IMG/VR virus record: IMGVR_UViG_3300022866_000322
Location: 124,001-188,000 of that record
DNA length: 64,000 nt
Strand: one strand, 5' to 3'
Shown here: positions 4,057 to 45,537 of the stretch, one piece after another
Position numbering within the stretch: the first letter of the stretch is position 1
Layout of the letters: each line of letters opens with the position of its first letter
Notes under the pieces: model-generated
The model's database searches: none
What the model was told of the DNA's origin: nothing
Seen by the model: the letters and a program-made list of their open reading frames with translations, nothing else
Program-made: the position numbers and the translations under genes

Positions 4057-4126
4057 ACGAGTAAATACAATAGCAATAAAGTTTCAAAGGAGGCACAGTA
4101 GCACAAATAACATTTAGGAGAACCAC

Positions 4127-4850: not shown

Positions 4851-4856
4851 GCTAAC

Positions 4857-6002: not shown

Positions 6003-6010
6003 TAAACACA

Positions 6011-13518: not shown

Positions 13519-13534
13519 TTTACAAGGAGCGAAC

Positions 13535-25841: not shown

Positions 25842-25851
25842 GCTATTCTTT

Positions 25852-27998: not shown

Positions 27999-28599
27999 AA
28001 ATTTTATCTGCTATTCGTTGATGTCCAAGTTCCAATGGATGTCCATTTGGGCCTAACGGACAACCATCCTGCCAATGCGTGAATCCCTCATGAGGCCAAC
28101 CCAAGTAGTGTTCTTTGTCTACTGCATCAGCCATATGCTGTAAACCAATATTCTTATAGTGGTAGTCGTCCCAGTGCCCGTCCATACTAACAAACACATA
28201 CTTTTGTCTACGCTGTTTTAAAAGATCTTGTAGTGCTAATACCTTTGCTAACCAAGTTTGTGTTGCGTGTGCTACATCATAGTGTTCTGCATAATACTGT
28301 TTAATCCACGGGAACCTAGTGTGGTGATGATAACTAGCACTGGTTATTTGTAGCTCTTTTCCTCCGAACATTAAATCAAGTCTTGACGGTTCAGTCCAAG
28401 CGCATATTACTAGTTCATAATTATTTTGTACAACCCGGTCAATAGTAACCCTAAACATCCTATCGTTACTACCCCCAGGTACAGCAAGGTTGTAAACTCC
28501 AAAGTCTAATTCTCTTCCCAATAGATACGGCCATGCGTCTTGTTCACGATTGTCAAGTTCTGCACCGTAGGTAAAACTGTCGCCTATTGTTAAAATCAT
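27964..28599 (-). CDS. SGNH/GDSL hydrolase-like protein
   Basis: TIGDSFTYG, NLAVPGGSNDR, CAWT, GHPLELGH. Confidence 0.7.
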   Translation of the reverse strand: MILTIGDSFTYGAELDNREQDAWPYLLGRELDFGVYNLAVPGGSNDRMFRVTIDRVVQNNYELVICAWTEPSRLDLMFGGKELQITSASYHHHTRFPWIKQYYAEHYDVAHATQTWLAKVLALQDLLKQRRQKYVFVSMDGHWDDYHYKNIGLQHMADAVDKEHYLGWPHEGFTHWQDGCPLGPNGHPLELGHQRIADKIYEHIRNKQWFS

Positions 28600-28697
28600 T
28601 TGTAAATAAAAGGATCTCGTTTTTTAAGTTCTTTGAGCTTTTTACGATAGCGTATTTCTAGGATGATTCTATTCCAAAGGTTCTTTAACCAGTTCAT
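28596..28697 (-). CDS. 33-aa basic micropeptide MNWLKNLWNRIILEIRYRKKLKELKKRDPFIYK (not in ORF track)
   Basis: Read manually. Fills the gap between two SGNH genes; its TGA overlaps the next ATG (ATGA). Confidence 0.65.
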   Translation of the reverse strand: MNWLKNLWNRIILEIRYRKKLKELKKRDPFIYK

Positions 28698-29481
28698 TGA
28701 ACTTGTCCTTCATAAGTTGATAAGCGGCATCGTGCGCTTCTTCTAGTGGATGTGTTTCTCCACTAGGGTATTTATTTTCCATTGCCCACTGGTAAAAACC
28801 TCTTGGGCCTGTTTCACCATCCGGAAACCAAAACCAGTTTTGTTGTCGATCTTTGATCTCCTTGACTAGCATGTTGATGTTATCATCACACATCTTCATT
28901 GATCTGTTACTAGCGTCATGTATCAATTTATTGCACAAGATACTGTTATCTGCACATGTGAACATGTACTTTATTCCGTTTGCAATTAAGTAGTTTTGCA
29001 GATACACTATTTCTTTTAACGATTGGTATGTGTCCCAGTAATCCCCACCTACATGTTTGTAGAAAGTTTCAGCAAAACCTGCCATACCTTTTTGCGTAGC
29101 TCTAGCAATGTGCTCGCTTTGCATTCTTGCTATAGGATTTTCTAATTTGATATCTGCGGTGTGCGGAGTAATAGCGTACCAATTACCTGTGCGTTGCCCT
29201 GTGTCGTAGTTGAATCTAAATTCATACCTGCCAGGGAATGTCCAGTTTACAATAACAAATAAATCACGGACCTGAGTGCCGTGCATGCGGTATACATAAA
29301 CTTCATCAATCACTCTACGTGCAATAGCATCGTTGCCTATACCGGGCCAGGCTGTGCATCTATATGTTTGTTTAATATCATGTGCCAACAATGCAGGAAA
29401 TGTGCTGTGACTATGCGCACGTATGCAGTCTTTTAATTCACTACCGTATACGAAACTATCACCCCCTGCTACTATGTTCAT
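28669..29481 (-). CDS. SGNH/GDSL hydrolase-like protein
   Basis: AGGDSFVYG, GIGNDAIAR, VNWT, THPLEEAH. Confidence 0.7.
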   Translation of the reverse strand: MNIVAGGDSFVYGSELKDCIRAHSHSTFPALLAHDIKQTYRCTAWPGIGNDAIARRVIDEVYVYRMHGTQVRDLFVIVNWTFPGRYEFRFNYDTGQRTGNWYAITPHTADIKLENPIARMQSEHIARATQKGMAGFAETFYKHVGGDYWDTYQSLKEIVYLQNYLIANGIKYMFTCADNSILCNKLIHDASNRSMKMCDDNINMLVKEIKDRQQNWFWFPDGETGPRGFYQWAMENKYPSGETHPLEEAHDAAYQLMKDKFNELVKEPLE

Positions 29482-30607
29482 ACCCTGGCCTCATCATGTC
29501 TATTTGCGTTTGTTTGTAGTTATGGTCACCCCAACAATAATCAAACGTATTACTCACGTCTCCAACTTCTATACGGTAAATGTCTAAGTGATTGCTAAGA
29601 TGTTGTAGTATTGCTTGGGGATGACATTGTCCAAAACTTTCTGTCAGCAATACTTGTCCAATTTTTGCATGCCCTAAACTTAACTGTGGATCAGTTGGGT
29701 CCATGCCGTTAAGTTCTAACCAATTAGTAAAGTCATCAATTTCTTTATTGTGCCACTCGTAACCATCAACATAGCGTATTGTTTTACCCCACTCTACATC
29801 AAACTCTCCCGAGTAGTATTGTAAATGAGTAATTGCTTCACATACCGTGTCAGTTAATTCTGGTGCATGCTCATCCCTAAACACTTCCATCAGTGTTTTG
29901 CCAATTTGTGTCCAGTGCATGTATACTCCACCAAACTCTCTGTCGTATCCGTTTGCAATAAAATCTTTCCTATGCTCGTCCGTTAGCTCAAAACGTAATG
30001 CTTGCAAGAATGTTGTAATCTGACTAGGACGTACCCAGTCTGGCACTGTTGCTTGTTTACGTTGACTTAGAATAAGCGTTTCTGATTCGTGACATAAGTT
30101 GTTTAGTTGCCTAATAGCGTATTTGGTTTCAAAATCTGCATGTTTGTAATAAGGACTTAGATTTTCTACAGTGCCTTGCAGTACTTCGAAGTAGTTATGT
30201 AGTCTATTCATTGCACCATGCTTGACCCCAAGGCCCAAGTTGTCACTATCATAGCCAACAGGATATTCATCACCGAATCGGACAGTGTCTGGCGTAAAGT
30301 AATCTTCTATTATGTAAGGTTTAAGTCCCGCTTGCTGCCAAATACCTGTGCGATTAAAAATATTAATACGGTATATCGAATCATTTATTTCGCGACACAG
30401 ATAGGGCAAGTTGCGCGGCGAATGGGGGAAGCCCATAAAGCAATAATTTTTTTCTAATAGTCTGTTGCTTCGTAATTCTACCTGCAATGCACTCGCCCAG
30501 TCCTGCGCCAATTGGGTATCTGTTAATTCTATTGTGTAGTCTAACTGATCTTTTTTGTCTAAAGGATTACGTAGTACTACCTTAACTGATTTGATTCCAC
30601 CACTCAT
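29459..30607 (-). CDS. Hypothetical protein within the radical SAM cluster
   Basis: ~380-aa ORF; NRLHNYFE, LNNLCHE, HWTQIGKT. Start uncertain (30607 or 30637). Confidence 0.7.
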   Translation of the reverse strand: MSGGIKSVKVVLRNPLDKKDQLDYTIELTDTQLAQDWASALQVELRSNRLLEKNYCFMGFPHSPRNLPYLCREINDSIYRINIFNRTGIWQQAGLKPYIIEDYFTPDTVRFGDEYPVGYDSDNLGLGVKHGAMNRLHNYFEVLQGTVENLSPYYKHADFETKYAIRQLNNLCHESETLILSQRKQATVPDWVRPSQITTFLQALRFELTDEHRKDFIANGYDREFGGVYMHWTQIGKTLMEVFRDEHAPELTDTVCEAITHLQYYSGEFDVEWGKTIRYVDGYEWHNKEIDDFTNWLELNGMDPTDPQLSLGHAKIGQVLLTESFGQCHPQAILQHLSNHLDIYRIEVGDVSNTFDYCWGDHNYKQTQIDMMRPGYEHSSRG

Positions 30608-31868
30608 ATACGTCTGGTCTCTTGGACAATATTTCATCCATTGTAGTTGATTGCGTTCTAATACTTTCTAATTGTAACACACGAGCCTTGCCTTTTGCAA
30701 GTCCTTGTTTGTATTCATTTGGCCATTGTTCGTCAAACGTAGGACGTGATTTAAGTTGCTGTAGTACATCATGCATTGCACCATGTGTGTCCGGCAACAG
30801 TTCGTCCACCCATTTATGTAAAATAGATTTTGGTAGTGCTAGTGGACTCAACGCAATATCCGGGCTAAAGCTGAAAACAACTTTAGCCAAGATATCTACA
30901 TTAAGCTCACGTGCTAGTTTGATTATTGGAACGACTTCAAACATACCCGGTAAGGTAAGCGTGAAGTCTATTCTCATTTGTCTTCTATGAGTAGCTGTAC
31001 TAACTCCTCGTTTAAAATTTTCAAGCCACTCCGGATAGTCAAGACCTGTTCTGACATACTCTCCAATTGTGCCTGTACCGTCAATGCTTGCGCATATTTG
31101 CCAGTCGCGAAGCCCAGGTAAAATATCACTGTAAAGATCGCAACCGCGATAAGTGATCCTACTAAGATTAGTGTTGTACCTTGCATAAACATTTTTTCCA
31201 TCTCCCAGTTCAATTATTCTCTGCATGTACTTCCAGTGTTGCTCGTACATGAGAGGTTCACCGCCTACCCAATAGACTTCCTCGACACGGTGGTCCTCTA
31301 CCGCTTGTGCAAACTCTTGTTCAACTTGAGTACTTTGGAAATGTTCAATCTGATTCTTGACCTCGGGGCGCATCCAACTGTTTTTTGGATCGTGCCAATT
31401 GACCATGTCATGCTGTTTTTGCTCAGTTTCCCATGCACTGGACAGCATGTCGCCGCACATACGGCATTTGAAGTTACATAGGTTACTGAATCGATAATCC
31501 CAGGAGATTGGCTCCATGGAGGTGTAACCTGTTTCGTCAGTTGTTTCTACTGCGTGTAAGTACTTATGCCCAAATAAACTGTTAAAATATGAGCGGTAAA
31601 CGTCAGTGTTTAATAACTTGTCATTGCACACTTCACACTCTGGTAACGTTTCTCCTGCCATCATGCGCTTGCGCACACTACGCATGTGTTCACTATTCCA
31701 ATGCTGTTCTAATGTAATAGGTATATAAGTACCAGTACCTGCTTTTGTATCTATGTACTGTTCAAAGTTTTGTGCTGGTTCACGTGATGCACAACATAAA
31801 CGTCTTTCTGTCTGTGGACTCAGATACGTGTGTGTCCACGGTGCCATGCATAATGTTTTTGATTTCAA
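30582..31868 (-). CDS. Radical SAM enzyme with N-terminal SPASM/Twitch-like domain (7 of 7)
   Basis: CMAPW..LCC..CEVC; CNFKCRMC; GGEP; YNTN. Confidence 0.9.
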   Translation of the reverse strand: MKSKTLCMAPWTHTYLSPQTERRLCCASREPAQNFEQYIDTKAGTGTYIPITLEQHWNSEHMRSVRKRMMAGETLPECEVCNDKLLNTDVYRSYFNSLFGHKYLHAVETTDETGYTSMEPISWDYRFSNLCNFKCRMCGDMLSSAWETEQKQHDMVNWHDPKNSWMRPEVKNQIEHFQSTQVEQEFAQAVEDHRVEEVYWVGGEPLMYEQHWKYMQRIIELGDGKNVYARYNTNLSRITYRGCDLYSDILPGLRDWQICASIDGTGTIGEYVRTGLDYPEWLENFKRGVSTATHRRQMRIDFTLTLPGMFEVVPIIKLARELNVDILAKVVFSFSPDIALSPLALPKSILHKWVDELLPDTHGAMHDVLQQLKSRPTFDEQWPNEYKQGLAKGKARVLQLESIRTQSTTMDEILSKRPDVYEWWNQIS

Positions 31869-33133
31869 TTTTCGGCCATTGGTAAATTAGCTAACTTAAA
31901 ATATTCTTTTAAATCGTCGTACAAATAATGTTTGCTATCATATACATTCATGTCATAAAAAACTTCTTTGTCCCAGGTATCCCAATTCCACATTTTTTGT
32001 ATATTCATCGACAATCCAAACTCTCTACACAGGTTAGCAAATAGAGGTAGATCTTTATAATTACTCTTTTGTACTACAAAGTCAGCAGATAACTTTGTTT
32101 TAAAATTATTTTCTTCTATTAGATCTTTAACAAATTTTACATTTTTTAATAGGTTGTCCCACTGTCCGCCAACTCGTGTTAGTTTATAGGTTTGCTCACA
32201 GCCTGCATCAAAACTTATACGTAACTCTGAGATATAAGGAAGTAACTTCAACACTAAGTCTTTCTTTGCAATAAGGACACTGCCATTTGTGTGTATAATA
32301 TTCTGTATGTTTGTTTTACCACTATCTATTATGTAGTCAAGCAGTTCTAAATAAACGTCACTTATAAATGGCTCGCCGCCAGCCCATCTGATAATTATAG
32401 GTTGGTCCTTGATTTCGTCAATTATCAATTTTTTAATCTTTTCAGATATCGTATCATTAATTGGTCTTATAATGAGATCATTGTTGTAATTTTGATATTC
32501 TACTCTACAACTCGGACACTTAAAATTACAGCTAATATCAAAATCAAAAACTAAATTTTTTGGTATTTGTGTAACACAAAGATTTGAATCATCTTGATCG
32601 TCTAACTCTAAAGGTATTTGATCTTTATCAGTGTACGTTTTTTTGTGCGATGCTGGGTTAGCAGACTGGAAAAACGTACATATACTAGAATTGCAGTAGT
32701 AATATCTATCTTTAAGAATCTCGAATCTAATTTTCTTTGCTTGGTTGCAATTTAATATTTCGTAAATGTTTTTTGAATCCAATACTGTGCCTAAGAAAAT
32801 AGGAATCCAACTTGAGCAAGCACATAAAAAAACATTCCCGTTTTCATTGACTCCCATTGTTTCCCATGGTTCCCTGCACCTGTTTGTTCCAGTATATGAT
32901 TTGTTATAAAAAACTTGATCCTGGCGTGTTTGAATTGATGTTGACAACTCTTCGGTTGACTTAGATGCTATATCTTTATAATGTTCCTCCATTACGCCAA
33001 CAAAATTACTTAATTCATTGTCAATGGTAGGAGAAACACTATAGTTGTCATTAATAAAATCGTCATACTGAGGCCAATCCGCCCCTTTAAATTTTCTGTA
33101 TGATTTACTATCTATTATTTTCTTTAATTCCAT
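31865..33133 (-). CDS. Radical SAM enzyme (6 of 7), divergent, with an extra N-terminal module
   Basis: CREPW..LCAC..C...C; CNFKCPSC; AGGEP; HTNG; SFDA. Confidence 0.88.
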   Translation of the reverse strand: MELKKIIDSKSYRKFKGADWPQYDDFINDNYSVSPTIDNELSNFVGVMEEHYKDIASKSTEELSTSIQTRQDQVFYNKSYTGTNRCREPWETMGVNENGNVFLCACSSWIPIFLGTVLDSKNIYEILNCNQAKKIRFEILKDRYYYCNSSICTFFQSANPASHKKTYTDKDQIPLELDDQDDSNLCVTQIPKNLVFDFDISCNFKCPSCRVEYQNYNNDLIIRPINDTISEKIKKLIIDEIKDQPIIIRWAGGEPFISDVYLELLDYIIDSGKTNIQNIIHTNGSVLIAKKDLVLKLLPYISELRISFDAGCEQTYKLTRVGGQWDNLLKNVKFVKDLIEENNFKTKLSADFVVQKSNYKDLPLFANLCREFGLSMNIQKMWNWDTWDKEVFYDMNVYDSKHYLYDDLKEYFKLANLPMAEN

Positions 33134-33140
33134 AGTCTTG

Positions 33141-34346
33141 TTAGTACCCCATTGCCTTTGCTATTTCCGGGTGTGTGTCTGAAAAACTTTCTTTACGATA
33201 TCTATCAGTTTGTTGCATCTTAAACACAAACTCTTCGCCGTCAGTTCCTGCACCATTTTCGATAAATTTTACAATGCGCATGATTTCTGCTTTATGTTTG
33301 GGCATGAATTTACCGTTAAGTAACTTCTCCACCACAATACGTTTTGCTACTGGTGTCAATCCATCAATACACATGTGCTTAGGATCGTGTAACATGTTAA
33401 AGTAATGATCATTGAACGTTTGTGTGTTTACCCACTCGCATAGTTCTTCTAAGTAATAAACATTTTGTGCGTTAATGGTCATGCACACTTGTGTGGTAAT
33501 TTTTCTTATGTTGCGATCACGCAGTTTATGAAAACGTCTTATGTTGTCTTCTACTTCGTTCCACTTAGCACCGTAGCGTTCGTATTCAAAACGCTTGCCT
33601 ACGTTGTCGATACTGAATGCAATATCCACACGTTTAAAGTGACTCCATAACTCATACGCATCTGGCCATTGTGTACCGTTTGTGTTGTAGTGTATGTCAA
33701 TGTCTTTGGCGTAGCCTTGATCTACTGCATACTGTAGCAATTCAAAGTGTTCTTTGATCATAAATGGCTCACCGCCAGTGAATTCTAGATACTTGATGTT
33801 GGGTAGTAGTTCACGTAGGTTGTCCCAGAAGGCTTGTGTCTTTCTTGGCCATTGTCCTTGTTGCAAGAACTTGTATGCCAAGTGGCTCTTTTTGTTCTTC
33901 AATTCGGGTATATAATCTATTTCTTCTTGTGCCCATTTACTACTGCTCCAACTTCCGCATATACGACACTTTAGGTTACAAATGTTCCCCAGCTTTAAAT
34001 CCACAAACCATAATTGGTCTGGTTTGTCGTTAGCATAGTCTACTTTGTCAACAAACTCTTTTAGTCGGATCCTACTGTGTATGCGTTTGCTTGCACGGCC
34101 TGCGGCTTCTTCTTGCCAACAGCGTGTGCAGGTCTCTGGTTTCTCACCATTTCTAAATTGTTGCCGTAAGTCTTGCATGTACTTGCTGTTGTATATTGTC
34201 TGCAAATTGTCTTTGTTTAAGTCATACTTTTCGCCTGACTCATCTGTTATTTCGTCTATTGCCAAACAGCAAGGTCTTGCGGATCCAATTGGACTAGCTT
34301 CTATGCTAATCCAAGGTAGCATGCATATTGTTTTAGGAAGTTCCAT
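33141..34346 (-). CDS. Radical SAM enzyme with N-terminal SPASM/Twitch-like domain (5 of 7)
   Basis: CMLPW..PCC..CTRCW; CNLKCRIC; TGGEP; YNTNG; FSID. Confidence 0.92.
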   Translation of the reverse strand: MELPKTICMLPWISIEASPIGSARPCCLAIDEITDESGEKYDLNKDNLQTIYNSKYMQDLRQQFRNGEKPETCTRCWQEEAAGRASKRIHSRIRLKEFVDKVDYANDKPDQLWFVDLKLGNICNLKCRICGSWSSSKWAQEEIDYIPELKNKKSHLAYKFLQQGQWPRKTQAFWDNLRELLPNIKYLEFTGGEPFMIKEHFELLQYAVDQGYAKDIDIHYNTNGTQWPDAYELWSHFKRVDIAFSIDNVGKRFEYERYGAKWNEVEDNIRRFHKLRDRNIRKITTQVCMTINAQNVYYLEELCEWVNTQTFNDHYFNMLHDPKHMCIDGLTPVAKRIVVEKLLNGKFMPKHKAEIMRIVKFIENGAGTDGEEFVFKMQQTDRYRKESFSDTHPEIAKAMGY

Positions 34347-35661
34347 TTAGTTCCTTGTACTCAGGGAATGTGTCCCAGAAGTTTTCGTTTCTTATAACAT
34401 CTAATTTTGCAATTTGTTGCTCAAACTCAGGCCACTGCTTGTTGTTATCTTGTCCTTGTAATAAACTCAACACACTCTCATAGCCATTAATGGCACGACG
34501 TAAACTGTCCTGCGGGTCTAACCATGCAATATGTTCTTTGTACTTGGGCGTTATAACATTCTTTTTAAATTCCGTTGTAAATATATCTGGTCTGTACCAG
34601 TCTGGTGACTGACATATATTAATATTCCAGTCTTTTGCTTCAATTAGCCCTAACTCTACCCACTCTTTGTGAAAGTCTGGCACGTGTAGCACGTTCATTG
34701 CACTCACGGTTGCGCTTACATAAAAGTCCACATGCGGTACTTCTTTTAACATGCGTTGTCTGTTCTCAACTGTTTGTTTCCAATCTGTGCCTTTGCGCAT
34801 AAGCTCTGCTCTAGCACCACTAGCATCTAAACTGGCGCCAACACTAACATTCGTAAAATGTTGCCAGTAATCGAATACATGTTTGTTTTTATAACGCATT
34901 TCGCTAAAGTTTGTATTGTACTGTATTCGCACATCTGTCTTACCGTACTCTATTAGTTTGTCTAATAGATAATAATGTTCTTTCATTATAAGTGGTTCGC
35001 CACCTGCAAAATACACCTGCTCTAAATGTGGAATATGCTGTTCCATTTGTTCCAACATACTGTCTTCGTTGCCCGCAGTATACTCTACTCGTGCCATGTC
35101 CCTACCCAGTACATCTGGCTTACGATTATACAGTTTTACATGGTCATTATACCAATTACTGCTAAAGATAGGACCACAACTTCTACAGCTAAAGTTACAC
35201 AGGTTACTGAACCTAACGTCCCAGTAGCGTATTTTAAAATCATCTACAGAACCATCTGCATTAGTCTGCTCTGCTTCTGCTATGTGATGACCGTAGTTTC
35301 TGTTTGAATCGTTGCGCATACTAAATGCACCGTGTTGTTCTTGCTCGTAACACTTGGTACATTCTTTACACTCTTTACCTGCAAGCATATTTGTACGCAT
35401 TGTTTTGTAATCGTCTTGATTCCATACCTCTTCCATAGTATGCTTGCGTAAGTCACCTACAGGATGCCAATAATCACTTAGACAACAAGGATATGCTCTG
35501 CCATCTGGAAATGCATGCATGTGCATCCAGGGCAACATGCAAAACGTTTTGCTGTCCATTAACAAGTCTGTTTGTTTCTCAGTCAAGTCTTCTAGTTCTG
35601 CAAAGTACGGCTTGCGACTCATGTAGTCGTAGCCTTTGTTGTAAAATTTTTTAGAGTCCAT
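34333..35661 (-). CDS. Radical SAM enzyme with N-terminal SPASM/Twitch-like domain (4 of 7)
   Basis: CMLPW..PCC..CTKCY; CNFSCRSC; AGGEP; YNTN; ASLD. Confidence 0.92.
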   Translation of the reverse strand: MDSKKFYNKGYDYMSRKPYFAELEDLTEKQTDLLMDSKTFCMLPWMHMHAFPDGRAYPCCLSDYWHPVGDLRKHTMEEVWNQDDYKTMRTNMLAGKECKECTKCYEQEQHGAFSMRNDSNRNYGHHIAEAEQTNADGSVDDFKIRYWDVRFSNLCNFSCRSCGPIFSSNWYNDHVKLYNRKPDVLGRDMARVEYTAGNEDSMLEQMEQHIPHLEQVYFAGGEPLIMKEHYYLLDKLIEYGKTDVRIQYNTNFSEMRYKNKHVFDYWQHFTNVSVGASLDASGARAELMRKGTDWKQTVENRQRMLKEVPHVDFYVSATVSAMNVLHVPDFHKEWVELGLIEAKDWNINICQSPDWYRPDIFTTEFKKNVITPKYKEHIAWLDPQDSLRRAINGYESVLSLLQGQDNNKQWPEFEQQIAKLDVIRNENFWDTFPEYKELNGTS

Positions 35662-36994
35662 TGTACCAATCTGCTAGTTCTGGAAAAGTCTCTGTCAAGT
35701 TCTTTCCTCTGCGTTTGTCATACTGTTCGTGAAACTGTTTAAAGTCGTTGTGTAGTTTGGGCATGTCGAATGTGTCTGAATGTGGTGTTTCTACTACATC
35801 CAAGTAATCAATTAATCGTATGATGTGGTTAATCTCATGTTCATGCAACAACTGCCCAATTGGTCGTGCCGTTTGATAATCCAACCATGTGCGTAAACGT
35901 TCTTTGTGTTTAATTCTAATTTCTTCAGGGAACACCAACGGACTTTGGAAACTAGGGAAGCGTAAGATATTAAGTGTAAAACTTACAGCATGTTTACCGT
36001 GTTTTGATTTCCATCCAACTAATAAATCTAAAAAGGCAGTCAGACTTTCCAAACACAATGCATTAATTGTACACATTACATGTAACCCACGCAATTTATT
36101 TCTATGTACTTTTAGTACTTTGTTTATGTTATCACACCACAGTTCCCATTCCAGGCCGTCACGTATATACTCTGCTTGTTTATCCCAACTTTCGTTGCTA
36201 GTATATAGGTCTATAGGTTGGTCTACACTGTCGAACAATCTATCTACATCTATATCCTTACCTAAGTTACTGTTAATCGCCAAGCGTGTTTTACTCTTGC
36301 CTTTGTTTTGTTTAAACCAGTCTATAAGTTTCCAGGTGTAGCCACTCATTAGTGGTTCGCCACCTGTAATGCGTAGTTCGTCTAGCGTTCGGTGTAGGTC
36401 TGATTCCCACCACTTGAAGAACGCCTCAACATAAGGATTTTCCTCGCCGAATTTGTACAACTGCGCACTGTCATGAGCATGGGTAAAATGATTACGCCCG
36501 TCAGAAACAAGCCCAGTATAACTTCCGTTTGATTTGATATCCTTAACCCATGTACTACTAAAAGCAGGGTTGCAATAACTGCAAGCAAATTGACAAGTCC
36601 TATCGAAACTGATTTCCAAAGTTCGTAAGTCCACGTCTCCTGTTGCATCTGATTGATATGCATCGTCTAATTCCTTTATAGTATATATTTTACTTTTATA
36701 CACACGGTCAGAAATGTTATCACGTTTGATATCTTCAATCTTCCAGCAGTACTCACAACCTGGCGGACGTTCTCCTGCCTGCATCTGCGCCCTGTCTTGC
36801 TTCTTTTCGGGCGTGTTGTGTATTGCTTTGGGATTACGCTTAACTTCTTCAATATCAACTTTGTGTGCTGGTGGATGATGACAACTGGTACTCATGCCAC
36901 TACCAAGCCATATAGTAGCGTTATACCATTTTGCTCCACAAAAGCTCGCTGACTTTGTGTCTAATATTTGTTGTTTAAATTCTAAATCATTCAT
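35651..36994 (-). CDS. Radical SAM enzyme with N-terminal SPASM/Twitch-like domain (3 of 7)
   Basis: CGAKW..SCHH..CEYCW; CQFACSYC; TGGEP. Confidence 0.92.
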   Translation of the reverse strand: MNDLEFKQQILDTKSASFCGAKWYNATIWLGSGMSTSCHHPPAHKVDIEEVKRNPKAIHNTPEKKQDRAQMQAGERPPGCEYCWKIEDIKRDNISDRVYKSKIYTIKELDDAYQSDATGDVDLRTLEISFDRTCQFACSYCNPAFSSTWVKDIKSNGSYTGLVSDGRNHFTHAHDSAQLYKFGEENPYVEAFFKWWESDLHRTLDELRITGGEPLMSGYTWKLIDWFKQNKGKSKTRLAINSNLGKDIDVDRLFDSVDQPIDLYTSNESWDKQAEYIRDGLEWELWCDNINKVLKVHRNKLRGLHVMCTINALCLESLTAFLDLLVGWKSKHGKHAVSFTLNILRFPSFQSPLVFPEEIRIKHKERLRTWLDYQTARPIGQLLHEHEINHIIRLIDYLDVVETPHSDTFDMPKLHNDFKQFHEQYDKRRGKNLTETFPELADWYNGL

Positions 36995-38253
36995 TTTAAA
37001 TTATATTTTCCAAATTCGGCAACTAGCCAAGGAAAGGTTTTCCTCCAATTTATGTTTCTTCTCAAATCAATATCATTTAAAAAGTGAAACAAACTTGTTA
37101 TTTCCTTGACATTCGGTTCTTTGCTGTTGCTTTGCTTTCTTAATCCATCTAAGTAGTCTTTACTAAGCTGTTCTTCCTCTGTGTCAACAGGCTTTAATGC
37201 CAATGCCTTTTGAAAGTCTTCTTCGAATATGTTTCCGAATATGTCTATTCTTTGATTAGTAGGATCATTTACAGAGTTTTGATACAAGTAAATCTTTCTA
37301 ACCTTAGACCATTCCCTAACTTTTTCAAGTAATATAGGATAAGTTTTTATAGTCATTGGAGTAAGTGTTGAGTTAATAACTAAGTTAATATACTTCTTAG
37401 ACAATATGTACAAAAAGTTTTCTTCCCATTGTTTTAAATCTAACGGAAATCTAACATACTCGGCTTCCGGCCCCCAATTGTCCAAACTTGCTGTAACTTG
37501 AAACCCACCTATTTTTCTTTTTGCTATTAATTTCTCTACTTTACTTATAATTTCAACTAATCTATCTTTCTTAACACTAAGATTGGTAAAAATTTGTAGT
37601 GTAAGTTTCGGACTGGGGTATTGATCAAATATATCCAAACATTCTATAAATTCTTTTTGAAATAAAGGTTCTCCACCTAAAAAGTTAAACTGGCTTAAAT
37701 TATGCCCTTCGTTCTTTAACCAATCGTATACCTTTTGCTTGTTGGCATCGAAGCTATTTGCATTCTTAAAAATTACGCCATGTCTCGAATAACTCCACTT
37801 TTGACTTGTGTATTGCCCGACATGCTTGAAGTTTTCTTCTGCCCACATAGAGCTGAAAAGTTCTGAACAGTATAGACATTTTTGATTACACAAGTTGCTG
37901 AAATAAACTTCCAACACTGTAGGTGTCACACTGGTTGCTATCGGATTGTCCTTGAGTTCAGGGGGAGTTGGGACGCCGGGCATTGCCAGATTTGTTGTTC
38001 TATCGCTCTCGCCTCCTGCTTGTTCTATGTCTCTGCAGTATTCGCATCCTTGGCCAGGCCACTTGCCTTCTAGCATCATTTCCCTTGATTTAACTTTCTC
38101 TTCTGTATTATGAAAATCAAATGTATCTAAATCAAATTCATGTCGGTTGCAACGATGACAACTTGCTGTTTCGCCTAAACTGAGATATATGGTGCTCCAT
38201 CCCCATTTCAGACGGCAAGCAGTTTCTGTTTTTATAGGAAATATTTTATTCAT
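36991..38253 (-). CDS. Radical SAM enzyme with N-terminal SPASM/Twitch-like domain (2 of 7)
   Basis: CRLKW..SCHRC..CEYC; CNQKCLYC; LGGEP; ASLD. Confidence 0.92.
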   Translation of the reverse strand: MNKIFPIKTETACRLKWGWSTIYLSLGETASCHRCNRHEFDLDTFDFHNTEEKVKSREMMLEGKWPGQGCEYCRDIEQAGGESDRTTNLAMPGVPTPPELKDNPIATSVTPTVLEVYFSNLCNQKCLYCSELFSSMWAEENFKHVGQYTSQKWSYSRHGVIFKNANSFDANKQKVYDWLKNEGHNLSQFNFLGGEPLFQKEFIECLDIFDQYPSPKLTLQIFTNLSVKKDRLVEIISKVEKLIAKRKIGGFQVTASLDNWGPEAEYVRFPLDLKQWEENFLYILSKKYINLVINSTLTPMTIKTYPILLEKVREWSKVRKIYLYQNSVNDPTNQRIDIFGNIFEEDFQKALALKPVDTEEEQLSKDYLDGLRKQSNSKEPNVKEITSLFHFLNDIDLRRNINWRKTFPWLVAEFGKYNLK

Positions 38254-39631
38254 TGTGTGCGTGGTACCTGCATTCTTCCCAAAACTCTTTCATTTGTGGG
38301 AACGTTGCTAAAAAGTTAGTCTTACTACGTTTGTCTTGCTCGTTAAAAAATCTATAAAAGTCTGCACGTTGCATTATAACATACTCTGGTGTTAATTTGC
38401 TACCTTCGCGCATCCAATCTAGAACTCTGTGCATACGTGCTATTTCATAATCTTTAAATCCAACATACATGTTTTCTTCTGTTTCGCGATGTAATTCCAT
38501 CCACTCTATAATGCCCGCTAACCTGTCTGCATACACAGGCGGGAGTATCTGCAAACTTTGCCAAGTTGGCTGGCGCAGTATGGGAGTGTCAAACCAAACA
38601 CGTTGGTATGTATGACTCTGAGTTGCTCGTAAACGCAATATTTCTTGCAATAGATCCTGTAAACCTAATATGTTTAGATTATTCATTGTTATAATAAACG
38701 TTAAACTATTTCGGTACGGAATCTGAGTAAGGAAACTGTCACACCGCTTTATAATCTTCTGATAGTCTGCACCGTATCTGATATAATGTGCATGTTCTGC
38801 TATGCCAGTATCAATACTAACATACTGCATAAAGTGTTCTATGTTGCTGTTACATAGTTTTTCTACATAATTTAAGTATTGGATCCACAACTTTTCATCT
38901 ACACTAAAGTTACTGGTAACATCTATGTGCAGATCAGGCTTGGGAAACGCCAACACATAATCAAACACTTTGAATGTGTTACGATCCATAAGTGGTTCGC
39001 CGCCAGTCATCCTAAAGTGTTTTAGTTTAGGATACAGTTCGGGCCACCATTTCCAAAATGCTTCCACATACGGATTCTCTTCGCGAGCAGGGATAGGTCT
39101 ACGTCTGCCTGCAAAGTGTTCCGGGGCATTGTGTGGTTTGCTGGTTGGGTATGCGCCAAATCTTTTTATTTCGTCAGCCCAAGTACTGCTAAACTGAGGG
39201 CTACAGTAACTACACTTAAGATTACAAGCGTTGTTAAAATTGACTTCCACATAACTCGGTATTTCATCTTCATCGCCAGTGCTCTCCATTATACGGTCAA
39301 AGTGTTCTGCGGCCCAAGGCTCGCCTGAGCGATAATGTCTATCACTAAGGTTACCCATGTCTTCTTGTGTCCAACAATAACTACATTCGTTTGGACGTTC
39401 CTGCTTGATCATTATTTTGCGTTGTTCTTTTTTGTGCTTGGTATTGTGCAGTGCGCTAGGATTATCTTTTAGTTCAGCGGCATCTATTTGGTGCAGTGGC
39501 GGATGATAACAACTGTTGTTCAACCCTGTAGGCAAGTGCAGACTTACCTGTTGCCATTTGGCAAGGCACATTCCGTTTCCAAGTTTGTCACGCATCTGTT
39601 CTGCGCTATTCATAAAAACTGATTTAGCCAT
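38246..39631 (-). CDS. Radical SAM enzyme with N-terminal SPASM/Twitch-like domain (1 of 7)
   Basis: CLAKW..SCYH..CSYCW; CNLKCSYC; TGGEP; VSID. Confidence 0.92.
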   Translation of the reverse strand: MAKSVFMNSAEQMRDKLGNGMCLAKWQQVSLHLPTGLNNSCYHPPLHQIDAAELKDNPSALHNTKHKKEQRKIMIKQERPNECSYCWTQEDMGNLSDRHYRSGEPWAAEHFDRIMESTGDEDEIPSYVEVNFNNACNLKCSYCSPQFSSTWADEIKRFGAYPTSKPHNAPEHFAGRRRPIPAREENPYVEAFWKWWPELYPKLKHFRMTGGEPLMDRNTFKVFDYVLAFPKPDLHIDVTSNFSVDEKLWIQYLNYVEKLCNSNIEHFMQYVSIDTGIAEHAHYIRYGADYQKIIKRCDSFLTQIPYRNSLTFIITMNNLNILGLQDLLQEILRLRATQSHTYQRVWFDTPILRQPTWQSLQILPPVYADRLAGIIEWMELHRETEENMYVGFKDYEIARMHRVLDWMREGSKLTPEYVIMQRADFYRFFNEQDKRSKTNFLATFPQMKEFWEECRYHAHNE

Positions 39632-40560
39632 TACCAGCCTTCCTGTTTCCTAATAACACTTATCTCTGTGGTCATTACCTCAGCATTGCGTAGTGTAGCA
39701 CCATAATGATGTTTGAAAAACTTGCTCTGTTGTGCATCTAGTGTAACAATAGGTAAACCTAGCCGTTTTGTGAGTGCTGTTTCTAAATTTGCGTTATGCT
39801 CCATTGGGTCGTTGTCTTTAACTGACTCCCATAACTTTTCTAATTCAGCAAAGTCTTGTACACGCTTGTAAGGCCAGTCTTCTAACATGGTCATGTAAGT
39901 ACCAAGTCGTGCGCCATACATTGCCCACACACCATTCTCAACATCCATGCCTACACTTTGCCAAATACACAAATGATCATAGTTGCGATTGTTTACTTTC
40001 TTTTCAAACTCTACCAGTGTTGGCTTTGCACCACGATCCAAACACATCTTTACACCTTCTCTAAATCCTGCTCGCCATGCTTGCTTGGGTGTGCCGTTTG
40101 GGTATGTTGTACTGTAGCAGTTGTGCATTGCTATGTACTTGGGATCAAAACAAAACTCCACTGCTGTGTCGTCACTGCCATCACTGGCTTCGTGTGTTTG
40201 CATGTTGTTAACAAATGTACGTGACCAAACACTTAGTCCGCCGTTGCCGTAACGTAGTCCATTGATCGTGTTCTTAGCTTTCCAACGGAATGCGCCACCT
40301 TCGAACGCAGGTTCTATTTCCAACTGTAGGTTAAAGAAGTCAGGATCAGGTAAGTTATCACCATCGATCAGCACAAACCATTCTGTGTTGCTCAGAGCGG
40401 CTGCGGCTTTGTGTGCGGCATCTGACCCTTCTACTCCGTCAACACGATCCGCCCAAGGTACCATGTTCTGTATTTGTATCCAGAACTCTTCCTTCTTTGG
40501 TTCGTCATAACTTAGATAGATGCAATCCAAGTCTGCTATGTCAATAATCTGTGTATCCAT
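39631..40560 (-). CDS. GT-A fold glycosyltransferase-like protein
   Basis: CIYLSYDEP, SDAAHKAAA, FVLIDGDN (DxD), NGLRYGNGG, WRAGFREG. Confidence 0.6.
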   Translation of the reverse strand: MDTQIIDIADLDCIYLSYDEPKKEEFWIQIQNMVPWADRVDGVEGSDAAHKAAAALSNTEWFVLIDGDNLPDPDFFNLQLEIEPAFEGGAFRWKAKNTINGLRYGNGGLSVWSRTFVNNMQTHEASDGSDDTAVEFCFDPKYIAMHNCYSTTYPNGTPKQAWRAGFREGVKMCLDRGAKPTLVEFEKKVNNRNYDHLCIWQSVGMDVENGVWAMYGARLGTYMTMLEDWPYKRVQDFAELEKLWESVKDNDPMEHNANLETALTKRLGLPIVTLDAQQSKFFKHHYGATLRNAEVMTTEISVIRKQEGW

Positions 40561-40900
40561 AATATTCTGTGTTGTTGTGGGTTTCATCTTGCTCTAACAA
40601 TAAGCCTGCGTGGTTCTTTACTACTTGAAAATCACCTTCACCGTGTACCAATTGTCTTTTATATCCTGGGTTGAACACTTTTACTTTTAGTTCACCATCT
40701 TTTACTCGTGCGTACTTGTGCATGTTTTCGTATTCGTCTTGTTCGACAACAATATAATCACCTTCAAGGTGCGGCTCAGTCATTGACTGGCCTACAATCT
40801 CTCCATTGAGATCATGGTATACTCTGTACTCCTTTACTATTTCTTTAGGAGTACCAACCAGTGCATTAACTTCTGCTAAAAACTTTTCAAGCTCGTTCAT
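40541..40900 (-). CDS. Hypothetical protein
   Basis: ~119-aa ORF overlapping both neighbours. Confidence 0.65.
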   Translation of the reverse strand: MNELEKFLAEVNALVGTPKEIVKEYRVYHDLNGEIVGQSMTEPHLEGDYIVVEQDEYENMHKYARVKDGELKVKVFNPGYKRQLVHGEGDFQVVKNHAGLLLEQDETHNNTEYYGYTDY

Positions 40901-42525: not shown

Positions 42526-42811
42526 TATATTGTTGATGCCAGTCATTCATTACCGCTTGATATCGTTGTTGAGCTAATTCTAAGAATTCTGTTCTGTCTA
42601 CTTTGATTGGATTCTCATATGTGTCTTCTAAATACAGTTCGTCACTGTTCCACGTTGCCACGAATGATATCAGGTCAGGCGTGATCTTAAACAACCCATT
42701 ACCGTATGTCATGTGCAACTCTGTTTGAATGTGTTCTCTTAGTGTGCGTCTGTTGGCTTGATAGTCCGTGGCCTGCTTGATTTCTGCAACTATGTTGTCT
42801 AATTCTGTCAT
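42497..42811 (-). CDS. Hypothetical protein, first gene of the modification cluster
   Basis: 104 aa downstream of a consensus promoter. Confidence 0.7.
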   Translation of the reverse strand: MTELDNIVAEIKQATDYQANRRTLREHIQTELHMTYGNGLFKITPDLISFVATWNSDELYLEDTYENPIKVDRTEFLELAQQRYQAVMNDWHQQYNELRRLRRV

Positions 42812-42821: not shown

Positions 42822-42860
42822 AAAAAGAATGGATAAGCATATTATACTGCCTATCCATTC
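42822..42860 (-). terminator. Rho-independent terminator after the structural genes
   Basis: Minus strand GAATGGATAGGCA-GTATAATA-TGCTTATCCATTC-TTTTT: 13-bp stem (one G-U) plus U tract. Confidence 0.75.
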
Positions 42861-42869
42861 TGTTGTCAA
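42841..42869 (-). promoter_or_regulatory. Consensus sigma70-type promoter driving the modification cluster
   Basis: Minus strand TTGACA (42869-42864), 17 bp, TATAAT (42846-42841). Confidence 0.8.
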
Positions 42870-43812: not shown

Positions 43813-43832
43813 GTTCTACTTCCTTATGCTAT

Positions 43833-45488: not shown

Positions 45489-45537
45489 TTTAAGTTTTCC
45501 TCAACTTTATTATTTATGCGTATTTAAAACTGTGGTG

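What the first reader, a model, noticed from the sequence alone, without database searches (positions are those of the whole stretch)
30582..39631. Seven tandem radical SAM paralogues with inverted architecture (auxiliary Cys domain N-terminal) in two subfamilies
Seen: each has an N-terminal C-x2-[PK]W...C[CH]...CxxC-type segment before the CxxxCxxC/GGEP core, whereas canonical SPASM/Twitch domains are C-terminal. Genes 1-3 are 'KW..SC.H' type; genes 4-7 are 'PW..CC' type. Five share a C-terminal D..R......T[FH]P motif (DKRSKTNFLATFPQ, DLRRNINWRKTFPW, DKRRGKNLTETFPE, DVIRNENFWDTFPE, DRYRKESFSDTHPE). Inference: duplication and divergence into distinct steps or a hetero-oligomer, with the shared tail as a docking motif. 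Seven two-cluster Fe-S enzymes are a large cost, implying strong selection.
Basis: partly seen in the sequence, partly recalled or inferred. Interest (0 to 1): 0.8.

Follow-up and report, generated by a model that had tools for sequence, protein, structure and literature searches.

The report
Seven radical SAM genes, phage sugar operon
A large uncultured salt-lake phage carries seven different, well-conserved copies of an already catalogued but functionally unstudied type of iron-sulfur radical enzyme, sitting in one operon with sugar-transfer and sugar-decorating genes next to its tail fibres, so they most likely carry out successive steps in building an unusual sugar coat.

Summary
Seven back-to-back minus-strand genes (30582-39631) each encode a radical SAM enzyme with CX3CX2C and GGEP motifs and an N-terminal four-Cys domain.

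The "inverted architecture" is not new. It defines the curated NCBIfam family NF033640 (N-terminal twitch radical SAM). Six genes pass its cutoff and g6 is a divergent outlier. The C-terminal D..R...TFP motif is nearly invariant across the whole family, so it is not evidence for docking within this array.

What is notable:
- The window is a jumbo-phage contig (IMG/VR, 221 kb, salt lake).
- In about 45 related viral contigs, five of the seven (g1-g3-g4-g5-g7) recur as one-to-one orthologues in fixed order. g2-like and g6-like copies are accessory.
- dN/dS is 0.05-0.09, so the copies are old and non-redundant.
- They sit in a ~14 kb gap-free operon with three GT-A-like glycosyltransferases, SGNH hydrolases and a carbamoyltransferase, beside the fibre genes.
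- Relatives elsewhere, including the cultured Ralstonia phage RsoM2USA, sit among glycosyltransferases, DegT aminotransferases, sugar dehydrogenases and carbamoyltransferases.

Best reading: separate radical tailoring steps on a sugar or glycan. The chemistry is untested. No member has a solved structure, and I found no published function.

The parts
38246..39631 (-). g1: N-terminal-twitch radical SAM, core orthogroup, 'C..KW/SC.H' type
   Evidence: NF033640 306 bits against cutoff 170. CX3CX2C at residue 136, GGEP at 210, auxiliary Cys 22/41/83/86. Orthologue clade of 15-16 rows, SH-aLRT 99. dN/dS 0.055.
36991..38253 (-). g2: N-terminal-twitch radical SAM, accessory orthogroup
   Evidence: NF033640 218 bits. 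g2-like clade has only 6 rows and its position in arrays varies. dN/dS 0.090.
35651..36994 (-). g3: N-terminal-twitch radical SAM, core orthogroup
   Evidence: NF033640 295 bits. No Pfam hit at E<=0.01. 51% identical to RsoM2USA ORF202, which sits among SGNH genes and a carbamoyltransferase. dN/dS 0.059.
34333..35661 (-). g4: N-terminal-twitch radical SAM, core orthogroup, 'C..PW/CC' type
   Evidence: NF033640 410 bits. Pfam SPASM at residues 41-104, 48.8 bits. AF2 model pLDDT 92.4, pTM 0.91. Only generic radical SAM cores match in the PDB. More than 6,400 metagenomic homologues.
33141..34346 (-). g5: N-terminal-twitch radical SAM, core orthogroup
   Evidence: NF033640 357 bits. Pfam SPASM at 8-77 and Radical_SAM 48 bits. 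dN/dS 0.057.
31865..33133 (-). g6: divergent N-terminal-SPASM/twitch radical SAM, accessory. It has an ~80-aa N-terminal extension and CX4C in place of CXXC, and lacks the C-terminal tail region.
   Evidence: NF033640 only 92 bits, below the 170 cutoff, matching profile positions 4-326. Pfam SPASM at 86-148, 24.5 bits. Under 50 bits to all other paralogues. Separate 4-row clade. 100% amino-acid identity and dS 0.004 against locus L001.
30582..31868 (-). g7: N-terminal-twitch radical SAM, core orthogroup. TTG start overlaps the g6 stop.
   Evidence: NF033640 300 bits. Starting at the next Met (residue 8, the only 421-aa start, matching the 421-aa gene called for the L001 orthologue) would remove the invariant first Cys. 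All g7 orthologues keep 'LC[ML]A[PA][WF]' (W in 14 of 15) after a short leader.
39631..40587 (-). u318: GT2-like (GT-A, 'DGD' motif) candidate glycosyltransferase, immediately upstream of g1 and sharing one base with it (gap -1)
   Evidence: Present in 37 of 45 core loci at mean 67% identity. ESM Atlas neighbours include a 'Glycosyltransferase 2-like domain' cluster, score 0.99. 38% identical to RsoM2USA ORF350, which is also directly upstream of a g1-like gene. No Pfam or PDB sequence hit.
40887..41744 (-). u285: GT8-like (glycogenin-like) candidate glycosyltransferase
   Evidence: Profile against PDB sequences hits glycogenin-1, E 1.6e-3. Present in 37 of 45 loci. RsoM2USA ORF352 is 30% identical.
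41701..42546 (-). u281: second, weaker GT8-like candidate (DxD 'DTDY')
   Evidence: Glycogenin is the top PDB hit but only at E about 0.7. Present in 37 of 45 loci. RsoM2USA ORF353 is 29% identical.
42497..42811 (-). u104: conserved small protein, first gene of the operon
   Evidence: Present in 35 of 45 loci at 55% identity. RsoM2USA ORF354 is homologous. Function unknown.
42826..42869 (-). Intergenic control region: perfect TTGACA-17-TATAAT overlapping a 14-bp hairpin plus T-run, between the fibre-like gene and u104
   Evidence: It lies in the only gap (71 nt) between u309 and SGNH270. This is a consensus match only.
29459..30637 (-). u392: conserved orphan protein directly downstream of g7
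   Evidence: Present in 39 of 45 loci at 52% identity. AF2 model pLDDT 83, pTM 0.82. No PDB fold match, best E 0.4. No Pfam, PHROG or Atlas lead.
28669..29481 (-). SGNH/DUF6071-like hydrolase or acyltransferase, last gene of the gap-free operon
   Evidence: Weak DUF6071 hit. Present in 21 of 45 loci.
25377..28599 (-). Downstream tailoring block: SGNH/DUF6071 (27964-28599), NodU/CmcH-type carbamoyltransferase (26505-27998), SGNH-like (25852-26508), APS-kinase-like P-loop kinase (25377-25841)
   Evidence: Pfam Carbam_trans_N and _C, E 5e-52; DUF6071. APS_kinase. Carbamoyltransferase is present in 38 of 45 loci.
42883..48119 (-). Upstream fibre-like structural genes (u309, 551-aa, 487-aa and 373-aa proteins); candidate glycan acceptors (inference)
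   Evidence: PHROG tail-fibre and virion structural hits. u309 is present in 32 of 45 loci.

Best explanation
The seven genes encode non-redundant members of the N-terminal-twitch radical SAM family, NCBIfam NF033640. g6 is a divergent relative. Each should carry the SAM-cleaving [4Fe-4S] cluster on CX3CX2C plus one fully Cys-ligated auxiliary [4Fe-4S] cluster in the N-terminal twitch domain.

They are co-transcribed in a ~14 kb gap-free operon of a jumbo phage. That operon also holds three GT-A-like glycosyltransferases and an SGNH enzyme; more SGNH enzymes, a carbamoyltransferase and a P-loop kinase follow directly after a 69-nt gap.

Most likely each paralogue performs its own radical step on a carbohydrate substrate. 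The step would start with 5'-deoxyadenosyl H-abstraction, with the auxiliary cluster shuttling the electron, as in BtrN-type dehydrogenation, epimerisation or deoxygenation. The substrate would be an NDP-sugar or a growing glycan. The product would be a heavily tailored glycan, probably placed on the adjacent fibre proteins.

What is shown: family membership, motifs, conservation, non-redundancy, operon structure and sugar-enzyme neighbourhoods. What is inferred: cluster binding, the carbohydrate substrate, the reaction types and the virion as target.
For: Family and motifs: NF033640 scores of 218-410 bits for six genes. N-terminal Pfam SPASM hits in g4-g6 above the gathering score. Four N-terminal Cys, CX3CX2C and GGE are invariant or nearly invariant in 81 diverse members.

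Non-redundancy: one-per-contig orthologue clades for g1, g3, g4, g5 and g7 with SH-aLRT of at least 99. Fixed order in about 45 viral loci. dN/dS 0.05-0.09. 17 columns are orthogroup-specific and fixed.

Operon: no gap above 10 nt from u104 to SGNH270, with a perfect sigma-70 consensus in the single upstream gap.

Sugar context in the window: u285 resembles glycogenin GT8. u318 has a GT2-like lead. Carbamoyltransferase and SGNH genes. An NAD epimerase/dehydratase and a DegT aminotransferase lie at 19161-21249.

Sugar context elsewhere:
- A Flavobacteriaceae MAG polysaccharide locus.
- A triple-module protein beside GT1, GT2, DegT and transketolase-like genes.
- Family members interleaved with three GT2 genes.
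- A census of 122 neighbours in 15 divergent loci is dominated by GT2, GT7, GT1 and GT8 glycosyltransferases, DegT, UDP-Glc/GDP-Man dehydrogenases, PhyH, methyltransferases, carbamoyltransferases and SDRs.
- The cultured phage RsoM2USA keeps fibre-u104-u281-u285-u318-g1 synteny, and a separate g3 + SGNH + carbamoyltransferase block. That block lies next to virion proteins confirmed by mass spectrometry, ORFs 356, 359 and 361 (PMC8504454).

Four family-invariant Arg residues fit a shared anionic handle such as a nucleotide diphosphate. This last point is inference.
Against: - No member of the family has a known reaction or a solved structure. The model matches only generic radical SAM cores (viperin, anSME, MoaA, BlsE) at TM about 0.35.
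- I could not inspect model coordinates, so cluster geometry is untested.
- The glycosyltransferase assignments for the window's own neighbours are weak: E 1.6e-3, E 0.7 and an embedding lead.
- One bacterial g1+g3-like fusion sits next to a DNA_alkylation-repair-like gene and ClpXP, not sugar genes.
- SPASM/twitch relatives are often peptide maturases.
- The virion as the glycan's destination rests only on adjacency.
Confidence: 0.5

Rival explanations
1. Protein or peptide maturases. The seven enzymes would post-translationally modify the neighbouring Ser/Thr/Gly-rich fibre proteins or a small conserved protein (u104, u122). Possible reactions are epimerisation, thioether or C-C crosslinks, or formylglycine formation, as many SPASM/twitch radical SAM enzymes do.
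For: The weak secondary NCBIfam hits include several SPASM/twitch peptide maturases (StsB, WgkB, SkfB, AlbA, MftC), among cofactor, sugar-tailoring and viperin-like radical SAM families, as well as the anaerobic sulfatase maturase family for g6. The PDB fold hits include anSME, CteB, SuiB and EpeE. The array abuts fibre genes. Small conserved ORFs u104 and u122 travel with it.
Against: No RRE/PqqD-like recognition domain: the proteins begin directly with the twitch domain. u104 and u122 are not Cys- or Gly-rich precursor-like sequences. Bacterial and distant viral homologues sit among sugar enzymes with no obvious precursor. In RsoM2USA the g3-like gene is paired with SGNH and carbamoyltransferase genes, far from the fibre genes.
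Confidence: 0.15
2. Obligate hetero-oligomeric machine. The paralogues would assemble into one multi-subunit complex, with the shared C-terminal tail as the docking element.
For: Fixed gene order and overlapping stop and start codons. Natural fusions in the same order as the array: g1+g3-like P0122, g4+g5-like P0121, P0125, P0126, P0132, P0133 and P0137, and g5+g7-like P0124. Both modules in each keep CX3CX2C.
Against: The tail motif is family-wide and is present in single-copy loci. It lies in a well-ordered helix. Members occur alone in L007 and L065-L072. In RsoM2USA the g1-like and g3-like genes are about 90 kb apart in different sub-modules. P0121 and P0124 are each seen on one short contig and could be assembly indels at overlapping gene junctions. 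Copy number varies from 1 to 10.
Confidence: 0.12
3. Nucleotide or DNA modification. The enzymes would act on NTPs or on phage DNA bases, either viperin-like or as part of a hypermodification pathway, with the GT-like proteins glycosylating DNA.
For: Viperin is the top PDB fold hit and a recurrent weak NCBIfam hit. Four Arg residues are invariant. A P-loop kinase and a dCMP deaminase lie just downstream. The window encodes FolE, QueD and a QueE-like enzyme for 7-deazaguanine. QueC appears twice in the neighbour census. P0122 sits beside a DNA_alkylation-repair-like gene.
Against: The viperin similarity covers only the generic radical SAM core (TM 0.33). The deazaguanine genes are 23 kb away on the other strand. 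The recurrent neighbours are carbohydrate enzymes, carbamoyltransferases and SGNH esterases, which are not known DNA-modification parts. ThyA scores as a canonical thymidylate synthase at 364 bits, so no hydroxymethyl-pyrimidine route is evident.
Confidence: 0.1
4. Redundant or decaying duplicates with a single function.
For: All seven match the same family HMM.
Against: Pairwise identity is only 20-31%. Each core copy has its own orthologue clade. dN/dS is 0.05-0.09 and all catalytic motifs are intact.
Confidence: 0.02

Closest known systems
NCBIfam NF033640 (N_Twi_rSAM, 'twitch domain-containing radical SAM protein')
   Same: Full-length matches for g1-g5 and g7 at 218-410 bits against a cutoff of 170. 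They share the N-terminal four-Cys twitch domain, CX3CX2C, GGE and the C-terminal D..R..TFP element.
   Different: The family is a bioinformatic subfamily model with no assigned reaction. g6 scores only 92 bits. I found no paper describing conserved arrays of 5-10 paralogues in phages.
BtrN and other carbohydrate-tailoring twitch radical SAM enzymes (named from my own knowledge: BtrN, NeoN, HygY; BlsE came up)
   Same: They combine a radical SAM core with one auxiliary [4Fe-4S] cluster in a twitch domain and act on sugar or aminoglycoside substrates within glycosyltransferase, aminotransferase and carbamoyltransferase clusters. From memory, the C-x18-C...C-x2-C spacing resembles BtrN's auxiliary ligands; I did not verify this here.
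   Different: In those enzymes the twitch domain is C-terminal. Sequence and fold similarity is limited to the generic core: BlsE E 2e-4, TM 0.34. No shared reaction has been shown.
anSME, CteB, SuiB and PqqE-type SPASM peptide maturases
   Same: The auxiliary-cluster domain is homologous, with Pfam SPASM hits in g4-g7. They also appear among the fold hits.
   Different: Those enzymes have a C-terminal SPASM domain with two auxiliary clusters and usually a peptide-recognition domain. Here there is a single N-terminal cluster domain and no recognition domain.
Radical SAM genes of cultured large phages (Vibrio phage KVP40 'MoaA/nifB/pqqE family protein', Vibrio phages K566/K567, Ralstonia phage RsoM2USA ORF349 and ORF202)
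   Same: Same family by profile and fold: KVP40 Q6WHP4 TMq 0.60, four members in K566, and RsoM2USA proteins 36% and 51% identical to g1 and g3 with conserved neighbours.
   Different: Those phages have 1-4 copies. All are annotated as hypothetical or generic, and none has been studied (PMC8504454 does not mention them).
Phage virion glycosylation by phage-encoded glycosyltransferases (mycobacteriophages; recalled from my own knowledge, not checked here)
   Same: Glycosyltransferase genes lie beside structural genes, and the expected product is a glycan on virion proteins.
   Different: As far as I recall, those systems include no radical SAM tailoring enzymes. Glycosylation of this phage's virion is untested.

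Membership tests
Radical SAM superfamily | CX3CX2C cluster motif and GGE SAM-binding motif in a partial TIM barrel | tested here: met
   All seven have CX3CX2C and GGEP. Pfam Radical_SAM hits at E<=0.01 for six of the seven, none for g3; four (g1, g4, g5, g6) reach the gathering score. The g4 model has alternating beta/alpha elements and matches radical SAM cores in the PDB.
NCBIfam NF033640 (N-terminal twitch radical SAM) | Whole-protein HMM score at or above the curated cutoff of 170 bits | tested here: met
   g1 306, g2 218, g3 295, g4 410, g5 357, g7 300 bits.
NCBIfam NF033640 (N-terminal twitch radical SAM), gene g6 | Whole-protein HMM score at or above the curated cutoff of 170 bits | tested here: not met
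   g6 scores 92.1 bits and covers only profile positions 4-326. It has CX4C instead of CXXC and lacks the C-terminal region. It is a divergent relative, not a certified member.
Twitch/SPASM auxiliary-cluster domain | Homology to PF13186 with conserved Cys ligands and a beta-hairpin between the first two Cys | tested here: met
   PF13186 scores above the 21.5 gathering score: g4 48.8, g5 27.0, g6 24.5. g7 scores 20.1 and g1-g3 give no hit. C41, C60, C101 and C104 are invariant or at least 90% conserved family-wide. The model has strands at 47-50 and 55-57 between C41 and C60.
Twitch/SPASM auxiliary-cluster domain | Actually binds a second [4Fe-4S] cluster | not testable with these tools
   Needs reconstitution with EPR, Mössbauer or iron and sulfide analysis.
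Carbohydrate-tailoring radical SAM enzymes (BtrN-like function) | Acts on a sugar, NDP-sugar or glycan substrate | tested here: inconclusive
   Gene neighbourhoods are dominated by carbohydrate enzymes. No biochemical or structural evidence exists, and one bacterial context is not sugar-related.
RiPP/peptide-modifying SPASM maturases | Peptide-recognition (RRE/PqqD-like) domain and an adjacent precursor peptide | tested here: not met
   No extra domain precedes the twitch domain. No Cys- or Gly-rich small ORF lies in the operon, which has no intergenic space.

The most novel reading that the evidence does not exclude
The N-terminal-twitch radical SAM family would be a large, mostly virus-borne 'dark' enzyme family. 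Jumbo phages of marine, salt-lake, freshwater and soil hosts would use a conserved five-enzyme core plus swappable accessory copies (up to 10 per locus) as a multi-step radical pathway. That pathway would build a highly unusual, possibly enzyme-resistant glycan on their fibres or on the host envelope. This would be chemistry with no characterised precedent, and a new class of virus-encoded glycan tailoring.
Probability: 0.3. Interest if true: 0.75.

Novelty: new member of a known kind. Interest (0 to 1): 0.55.

Why it matters
The data here show four things:
- The family is very large: 6,481 clusters at 50% identity with E<=1e-30.
- Its nearest large clusters in the ESM Atlas are almost entirely viral.
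- Phages keep five or more distinct copies under strong purifying selection.
- The copies travel with sugar-transfer and sugar-decorating genes next to fibre genes.

This gives radical SAM enzymologists a defined, ordered set of candidate steps. It also gives them a cultured system, Ralstonia phage RsoM2USA ORF349 and ORF202, in which to assign a first function to the family. For phage biologists it gives a testable hypothesis for elaborate virion or envelope glycans in jumbo phages.

Tried and rejected
- Megablast of the array and of the first 20 kb against 50,697 phage records found nothing.
- Literature searches for N-terminal twitch or SPASM, NF033640, jumbo phage plus radical SAM, and SPASM plus phage plus glycosyltransferase found nothing relevant.
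- Sequence search of g4, and of its twitch segment alone, against PDB chains found no relatives.
- Foldseek of the g4 model against the PDB found only generic radical SAM cores, so the fold gives no functional transfer.
- u392 gave a good model but no fold match, and no Pfam, PHROG or Atlas lead.
- u318 and u392 profiles against PDB sequences gave nothing.
- The search for related loci with the seven-paralogue alignment failed because the alignment was too divergent. The single-protein scan of GTDB genomes returned only 4 loci, so it is not a fair measure of how common the family is in bacteria.
- The T4 late-promoter motif TATAAATA is absent, so late timing cannot be argued that way.
- I initially read the in-order natural fusions as Rosetta-stone evidence. 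I downgraded this because P0121 and P0124 each occur on one short contig.
- RNA-library contigs 85-99% alike cover g3-g5. The tool warns that DNA may be present in such libraries, so this is only a weak sign of expression.
- Redundant or pseudogene copies were rejected on dN/dS and orthologue clades.

Full report
**1. What is in the sequence**

One search lists seven consecutive minus-strand ORFs that tile 30582-39631 exactly:
- g1 38246-39631
- g2 36991-38253
- g3 35651-36994
- g4 34333-35661
- g5 33141-34346
- g6 31865-33133
- g7 30582-31868

Six of the seven genes overlap a neighbour by 4-14 nt; g5 and g6 are separated by 7 nt. Every protein has CX3CX2C and GGEP. Upstream of these, each has a Cys set spaced C-x18-C-x37..51-C-x2-C.

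There are two corrections:
- g6 has 'C.C' and CX4C rather than 'CC' and CXXC.
- g6 and g7 lack the tail motif.

Pairwise identity is 20-31%. A profile of the seven finds exactly these seven ORFs in the window.

**2. The architecture is a catalogued family**

All seven hit NCBIfam NF033640, 'twitch domain-containing radical SAM protein' (N_Twi_rSAM). Six exceed the curated cutoff of 170 bits: g1 306, g2 218, g3 295, g4 410, g5 357, g7 300. g6 reaches only 92 bits over profile positions 4-326.

Pfam places a SPASM domain at the N-terminus of g4, g5 and g6 above the gathering score. g7 falls just below it, and g1-g3 give no hit.

In an 81-sequence alignment of diverse members, these positions are invariant or at least 90% conserved (g4 numbering):
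- C41, W45, C60, C101, C104
- C155, C159, C162
- G220, G221, E222
- N251, S277, R289
- D421, R424

Two conclusions follow.
- The N-terminal domain has four conserved Cys. That is one auxiliary cluster, fully Cys-ligated, so it is a twitch domain rather than a full SPASM domain.
- The 'D..R......TFP' tail belongs to the whole family, not to this array.

An AlphaFold2 model of g4 is confident (pLDDT 92.4, pTM 0.91). It shows a beta-hairpin between the first two Cys and a well-ordered helical C-terminal region containing the tail, with pLDDT 97-98.

No solved structure belongs to the family. Foldseek finds only generic radical SAM cores (viperin, anSME, GDGT-MAS, CteB, MoaA, BlsE) at TM about 0.35. 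Sequence searches of the PDB find nothing. I found no paper on the family or on such arrays.

**3. Where the window comes from**

The window is phage DNA. The evidence:
- A baseplate wedge subunit, fibre-like proteins and a 4,719-aa structural ORF.
- ThyA, DHFR and dCMP deaminase.
- g4 is 100% identical to IMG/VR contig UViG_3300022866_000322, which is 221,342 bp.
- The sequence occurs in at least 14 salt-lake metagenome runs.

No cultured phage is close. Among 50,697 phage records, only Vibrio phages K566 and K567, Ralstonia phage RsoM2USA and one marine single-cell virus carry relatives.

In metagenomes the family is very large. It has 33,656 clusters at 50% identity with E<=1e-3, and 6,481 with E<=1e-30. 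The nearest ESM Atlas clusters are 93-100% viral. BFVD holds many full-length structural matches from uncultured Caudovirales, plus the KVP40 'MoaA/nifB/pqqE family protein'.

**4. The copies are old and non-redundant**

I scanned 75 fetched loci with a profile of the seven and classified each hit. About 45 related viral contigs carry orthologues of g1, g3, g4, g5 and g7. These are 60-78% identical to the window's copies and always in that order.

g2-like, g6-like and other divergent copies are inserted at variable positions. More distant contigs carry 4-10 members, and a few carry one.

A maximum-likelihood tree of 117 modules shows:
- One-per-contig clades for each of the five core genes, SH-aLRT at least 99.
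- Small accessory clades for g2 (6 rows) and g6 (4 rows).
- A deep split {g1,g2,g3} versus {g4,g5,g7,...}, support 99 and 95.
- g6 lies outside both groups.

Against the closest relative (L001), dN/dS is 0.049-0.090 for g1-g5 and g7. Seventeen alignment columns are fixed within every core orthogroup but carry three or more different residues between groups. Twenty-four columns are shared by all five groups.

**5. Hetero-oligomer or pathway**

Some 50%-identity cluster representatives are fusions of two or three modules in the same order as the array. They include g1+g3-like, g4+g5-like and g5+g7-like fusions, and both modules keep CX3CX2C.

P0121 and P0124 are each seen on one short contig. 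They could be indels at overlapping gene junctions. P0122, which has a linker and sits in a bacterial contig, and P0123, seen on two records, are more credible.

Three observations argue against an obligate complex:
- Members occur alone in several loci.
- Copy number varies from 1 to 10.
- In RsoM2USA the g1-like and g3-like genes lie about 90 kb apart in different sub-modules.

I therefore favour separate enzymes, perhaps loosely coupled, over a fixed complex.

**6. Context points to sugar tailoring**

From u104 (42811) to the SGNH gene ending at 28669, no intergenic gap exceeds 10 nt. The single 71-nt gap upstream holds a perfect TTGACA-17-TATAAT match overlapping a hairpin plus T-run.

Gene order in this operon is: u104, u281, u285, u122, u318, g1-g7, u392, SGNH. 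After a 69-nt gap come an SGNH gene, a carbamoyltransferase, an SGNH-like gene and an APS-kinase-like P-loop kinase.

Assignments for the neighbours:
- A u285 profile hits glycogenin (GT8), E 1.6e-3.
- u281 hits glycogenin more weakly, E about 0.7.
- u318 has a 'DGD' motif and GT2-like Atlas neighbours.
- The C-terminus of the 625-aa ORF at 21221-23098 is also u318-like.
- An NAD epimerase/dehydratase and a DegT aminotransferase lie at 19161-21249.

These neighbours are conserved with the array: u318, u285 and u281 in 37 of 45 loci, u392 in 39, and the carbamoyltransferase in 38.

Contexts elsewhere:
- A Flavobacteriaceae MAG homologue lies in a polysaccharide locus with ABC-2, PhyH, GDSL, UbiA, GT1, an epimerase and UDP-Glc dehydrogenase.
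- A triple-module protein sits with GT1, GT2, DegT and transketolase-like genes.
- A 31 kb contig interleaves four members with three GT2 genes and an SDR.
- A ten-member viral locus keeps GDSL, SDR and carbamoyltransferase genes.
- A census of 122 non-redundant neighbours in 15 divergent loci is topped by other radical SAM genes (three with B12 domains), PhyH, GT2, GT7-like, methyltransferases, DegT, UDP-Glc/GDP-Man dehydrogenases, carbamoyltransferases, GT1, GT8 and SDRs.

In the cultured phage RsoM2USA the module is split:
- One block is fibre-like ORF355, then u104-, u281-, u285- and u318-like genes, then the g1-like ORF349.
- The other block is SGNH, the g3-like ORF202 (51% identical), two SGNH genes and a carbamoyltransferase.

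The first block adjoins ORFs 356, 359 and 361, which were confirmed as virion proteins by mass spectrometry (PMC8504454).

**7. Most likely mechanism**

Each enzyme would cleave SAM at the CX3CX2C cluster and abstract a hydrogen from a carbohydrate substrate. It would use the fully ligated N-terminal auxiliary cluster for electron transfer. From my own knowledge, this is the role proposed for twitch clusters in BtrN-type dehydrogenases.

Four invariant Arg residues suggest a shared anionic handle such as a nucleotide diphosphate. The orthogroup-specific residues would set which position is attacked. Glycosyltransfer, carbamoylation and SGNH-type acyl chemistry would complete the product.

The product's destination is inferred from adjacency only. 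It could be the virion fibres or the host envelope.

Contigs in marine and salt-marsh RNA libraries match g3-g5 at 85-99%. This is only a weak sign that relatives are expressed.

**8. Rival explanations**

The rivals are peptide or protein maturation, an obligate complex, and nucleotide or DNA modification. Each is weighed in its own section with evidence for and against.

The nucleotide rival deserves a note because several small facts point that way:
- Viperin is the top fold hit.
- The window also encodes a FolE, QueD and QueE-like 7-deazaguanine set.
- One bacterial fusion sits beside a DNA_alkylation-like gene.

Against it, the recurrent neighbours are carbohydrate enzymes.

**9. Verdict**

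The finding is real but its headline claim, a novel inverted architecture, is already catalogued. The docking-tail idea is not supported.

What remains interesting is a conserved, ordered and strongly selected set of five core and two accessory uncharacterised radical SAM enzymes in a phage sugar-tailoring operon. The family is very large, its nearest ESM Atlas clusters are almost entirely viral, and its function is unknown. A cultured phage is available for testing.

Noticed in passing
window 864-7703 (+ strand): A 7-deazaguanine (preQ0-type) gene set: GTP cyclohydrolase I (864-1556), phosphoribosyltransferase (4857-5393), PTPS/QueD-like (6011-6511), cupin (6508-6852) and a QueE-like radical SAM (6852-7703). 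The phage probably modifies its DNA guanines. This would be an eighth radical SAM gene in the window, unrelated to the array, but it scores 28.6 bits, just under the 29.5 Pfam gathering score.
   Followed up: partly
window 48830-62989 (-): A single 4,719-aa ORF with FG-GAP and beta-propeller repeats lies between the fibre genes and a baseplate wedge gene (63001-63891). It is a giant structural or fibre protein. A second FG-GAP protein lies at 1618-4056.
   Followed up: partly
window 42826-42869 and 41274-41302 (-): Two perfect 12/12 sigma-70 consensus promoters (TTGACA-17-TATAAT) occur within 20 kb. One lies in the only intergenic gap ahead of the operon and overlaps a 14-bp hairpin with a T-run. 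The other lies inside u285. Perfect matches should be very rare by chance.
   Followed up: partly
window, whole: The T4-type late promoter core TATAAATA is completely absent: 0 matches against 5.5 expected from shuffles. There are no tRNA genes in the 64 kb.
   Followed up: no
window 30582-34346 versus L001: Mosaic divergence from the closest relative. dS is about 0.85-1.2 for g1-g4, 0.42 for g5, 0.004 for g6 (100% amino-acid identity) and 0.16 for g7. This suggests a recent recombinational exchange centred on the accessory gene g6.
   Followed up: partly
window 29459-30637 (-): u392 is a conserved partner directly downstream of g7, present in 39 of 45 loci. Its AF2 model is confident (pLDDT 83, pTM 0.82), yet it has no PDB fold match and no family hit. 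It may be a new fold or enzyme in the pathway.
   Followed up: yes
L081 and L082 (Ralstonia phage RsoM2USA MG752970, ORFs 348-355 and 199-203): A cultured soil jumbo phage has the same module split into two blocks about 90 kb apart: a GT block with the g1-like gene, and an SGNH and carbamoyltransferase block with the g3-like gene. All of these genes are annotated 'hypothetical protein'.
   Followed up: yes
window 21221-23098 (-): The C-terminal ~200 residues of this 625-aa ORF are homologous to u318, the GT2-like protein upstream of g1 (E 1.7e-15). This makes it a second copy of that domain outside the operon.
   Followed up: partly
window 12415-14806 (+): A MoxR/CobS-like AAA ATPase (phrog_1297) is followed by a phrog_1314 protein. 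The pair's role here is unknown.
   Followed up: no
L063 (IMGVR_UViG_3300005805_000064) and L055: One distant viral locus packs 10 family members into about 15 kb. Another combines six members with a B12-binding radical SAM and a DegT fusion protein.
   Followed up: partly
L083 (ENA ERZ650271 contig): A bacterial 950-aa fusion of g1-like and g3-like modules sits beside a DNA_alkylation-repair-like gene, PadR and ClpXP, with no sugar genes in view. This context does not fit the sugar-tailoring reading.
   Followed up: no
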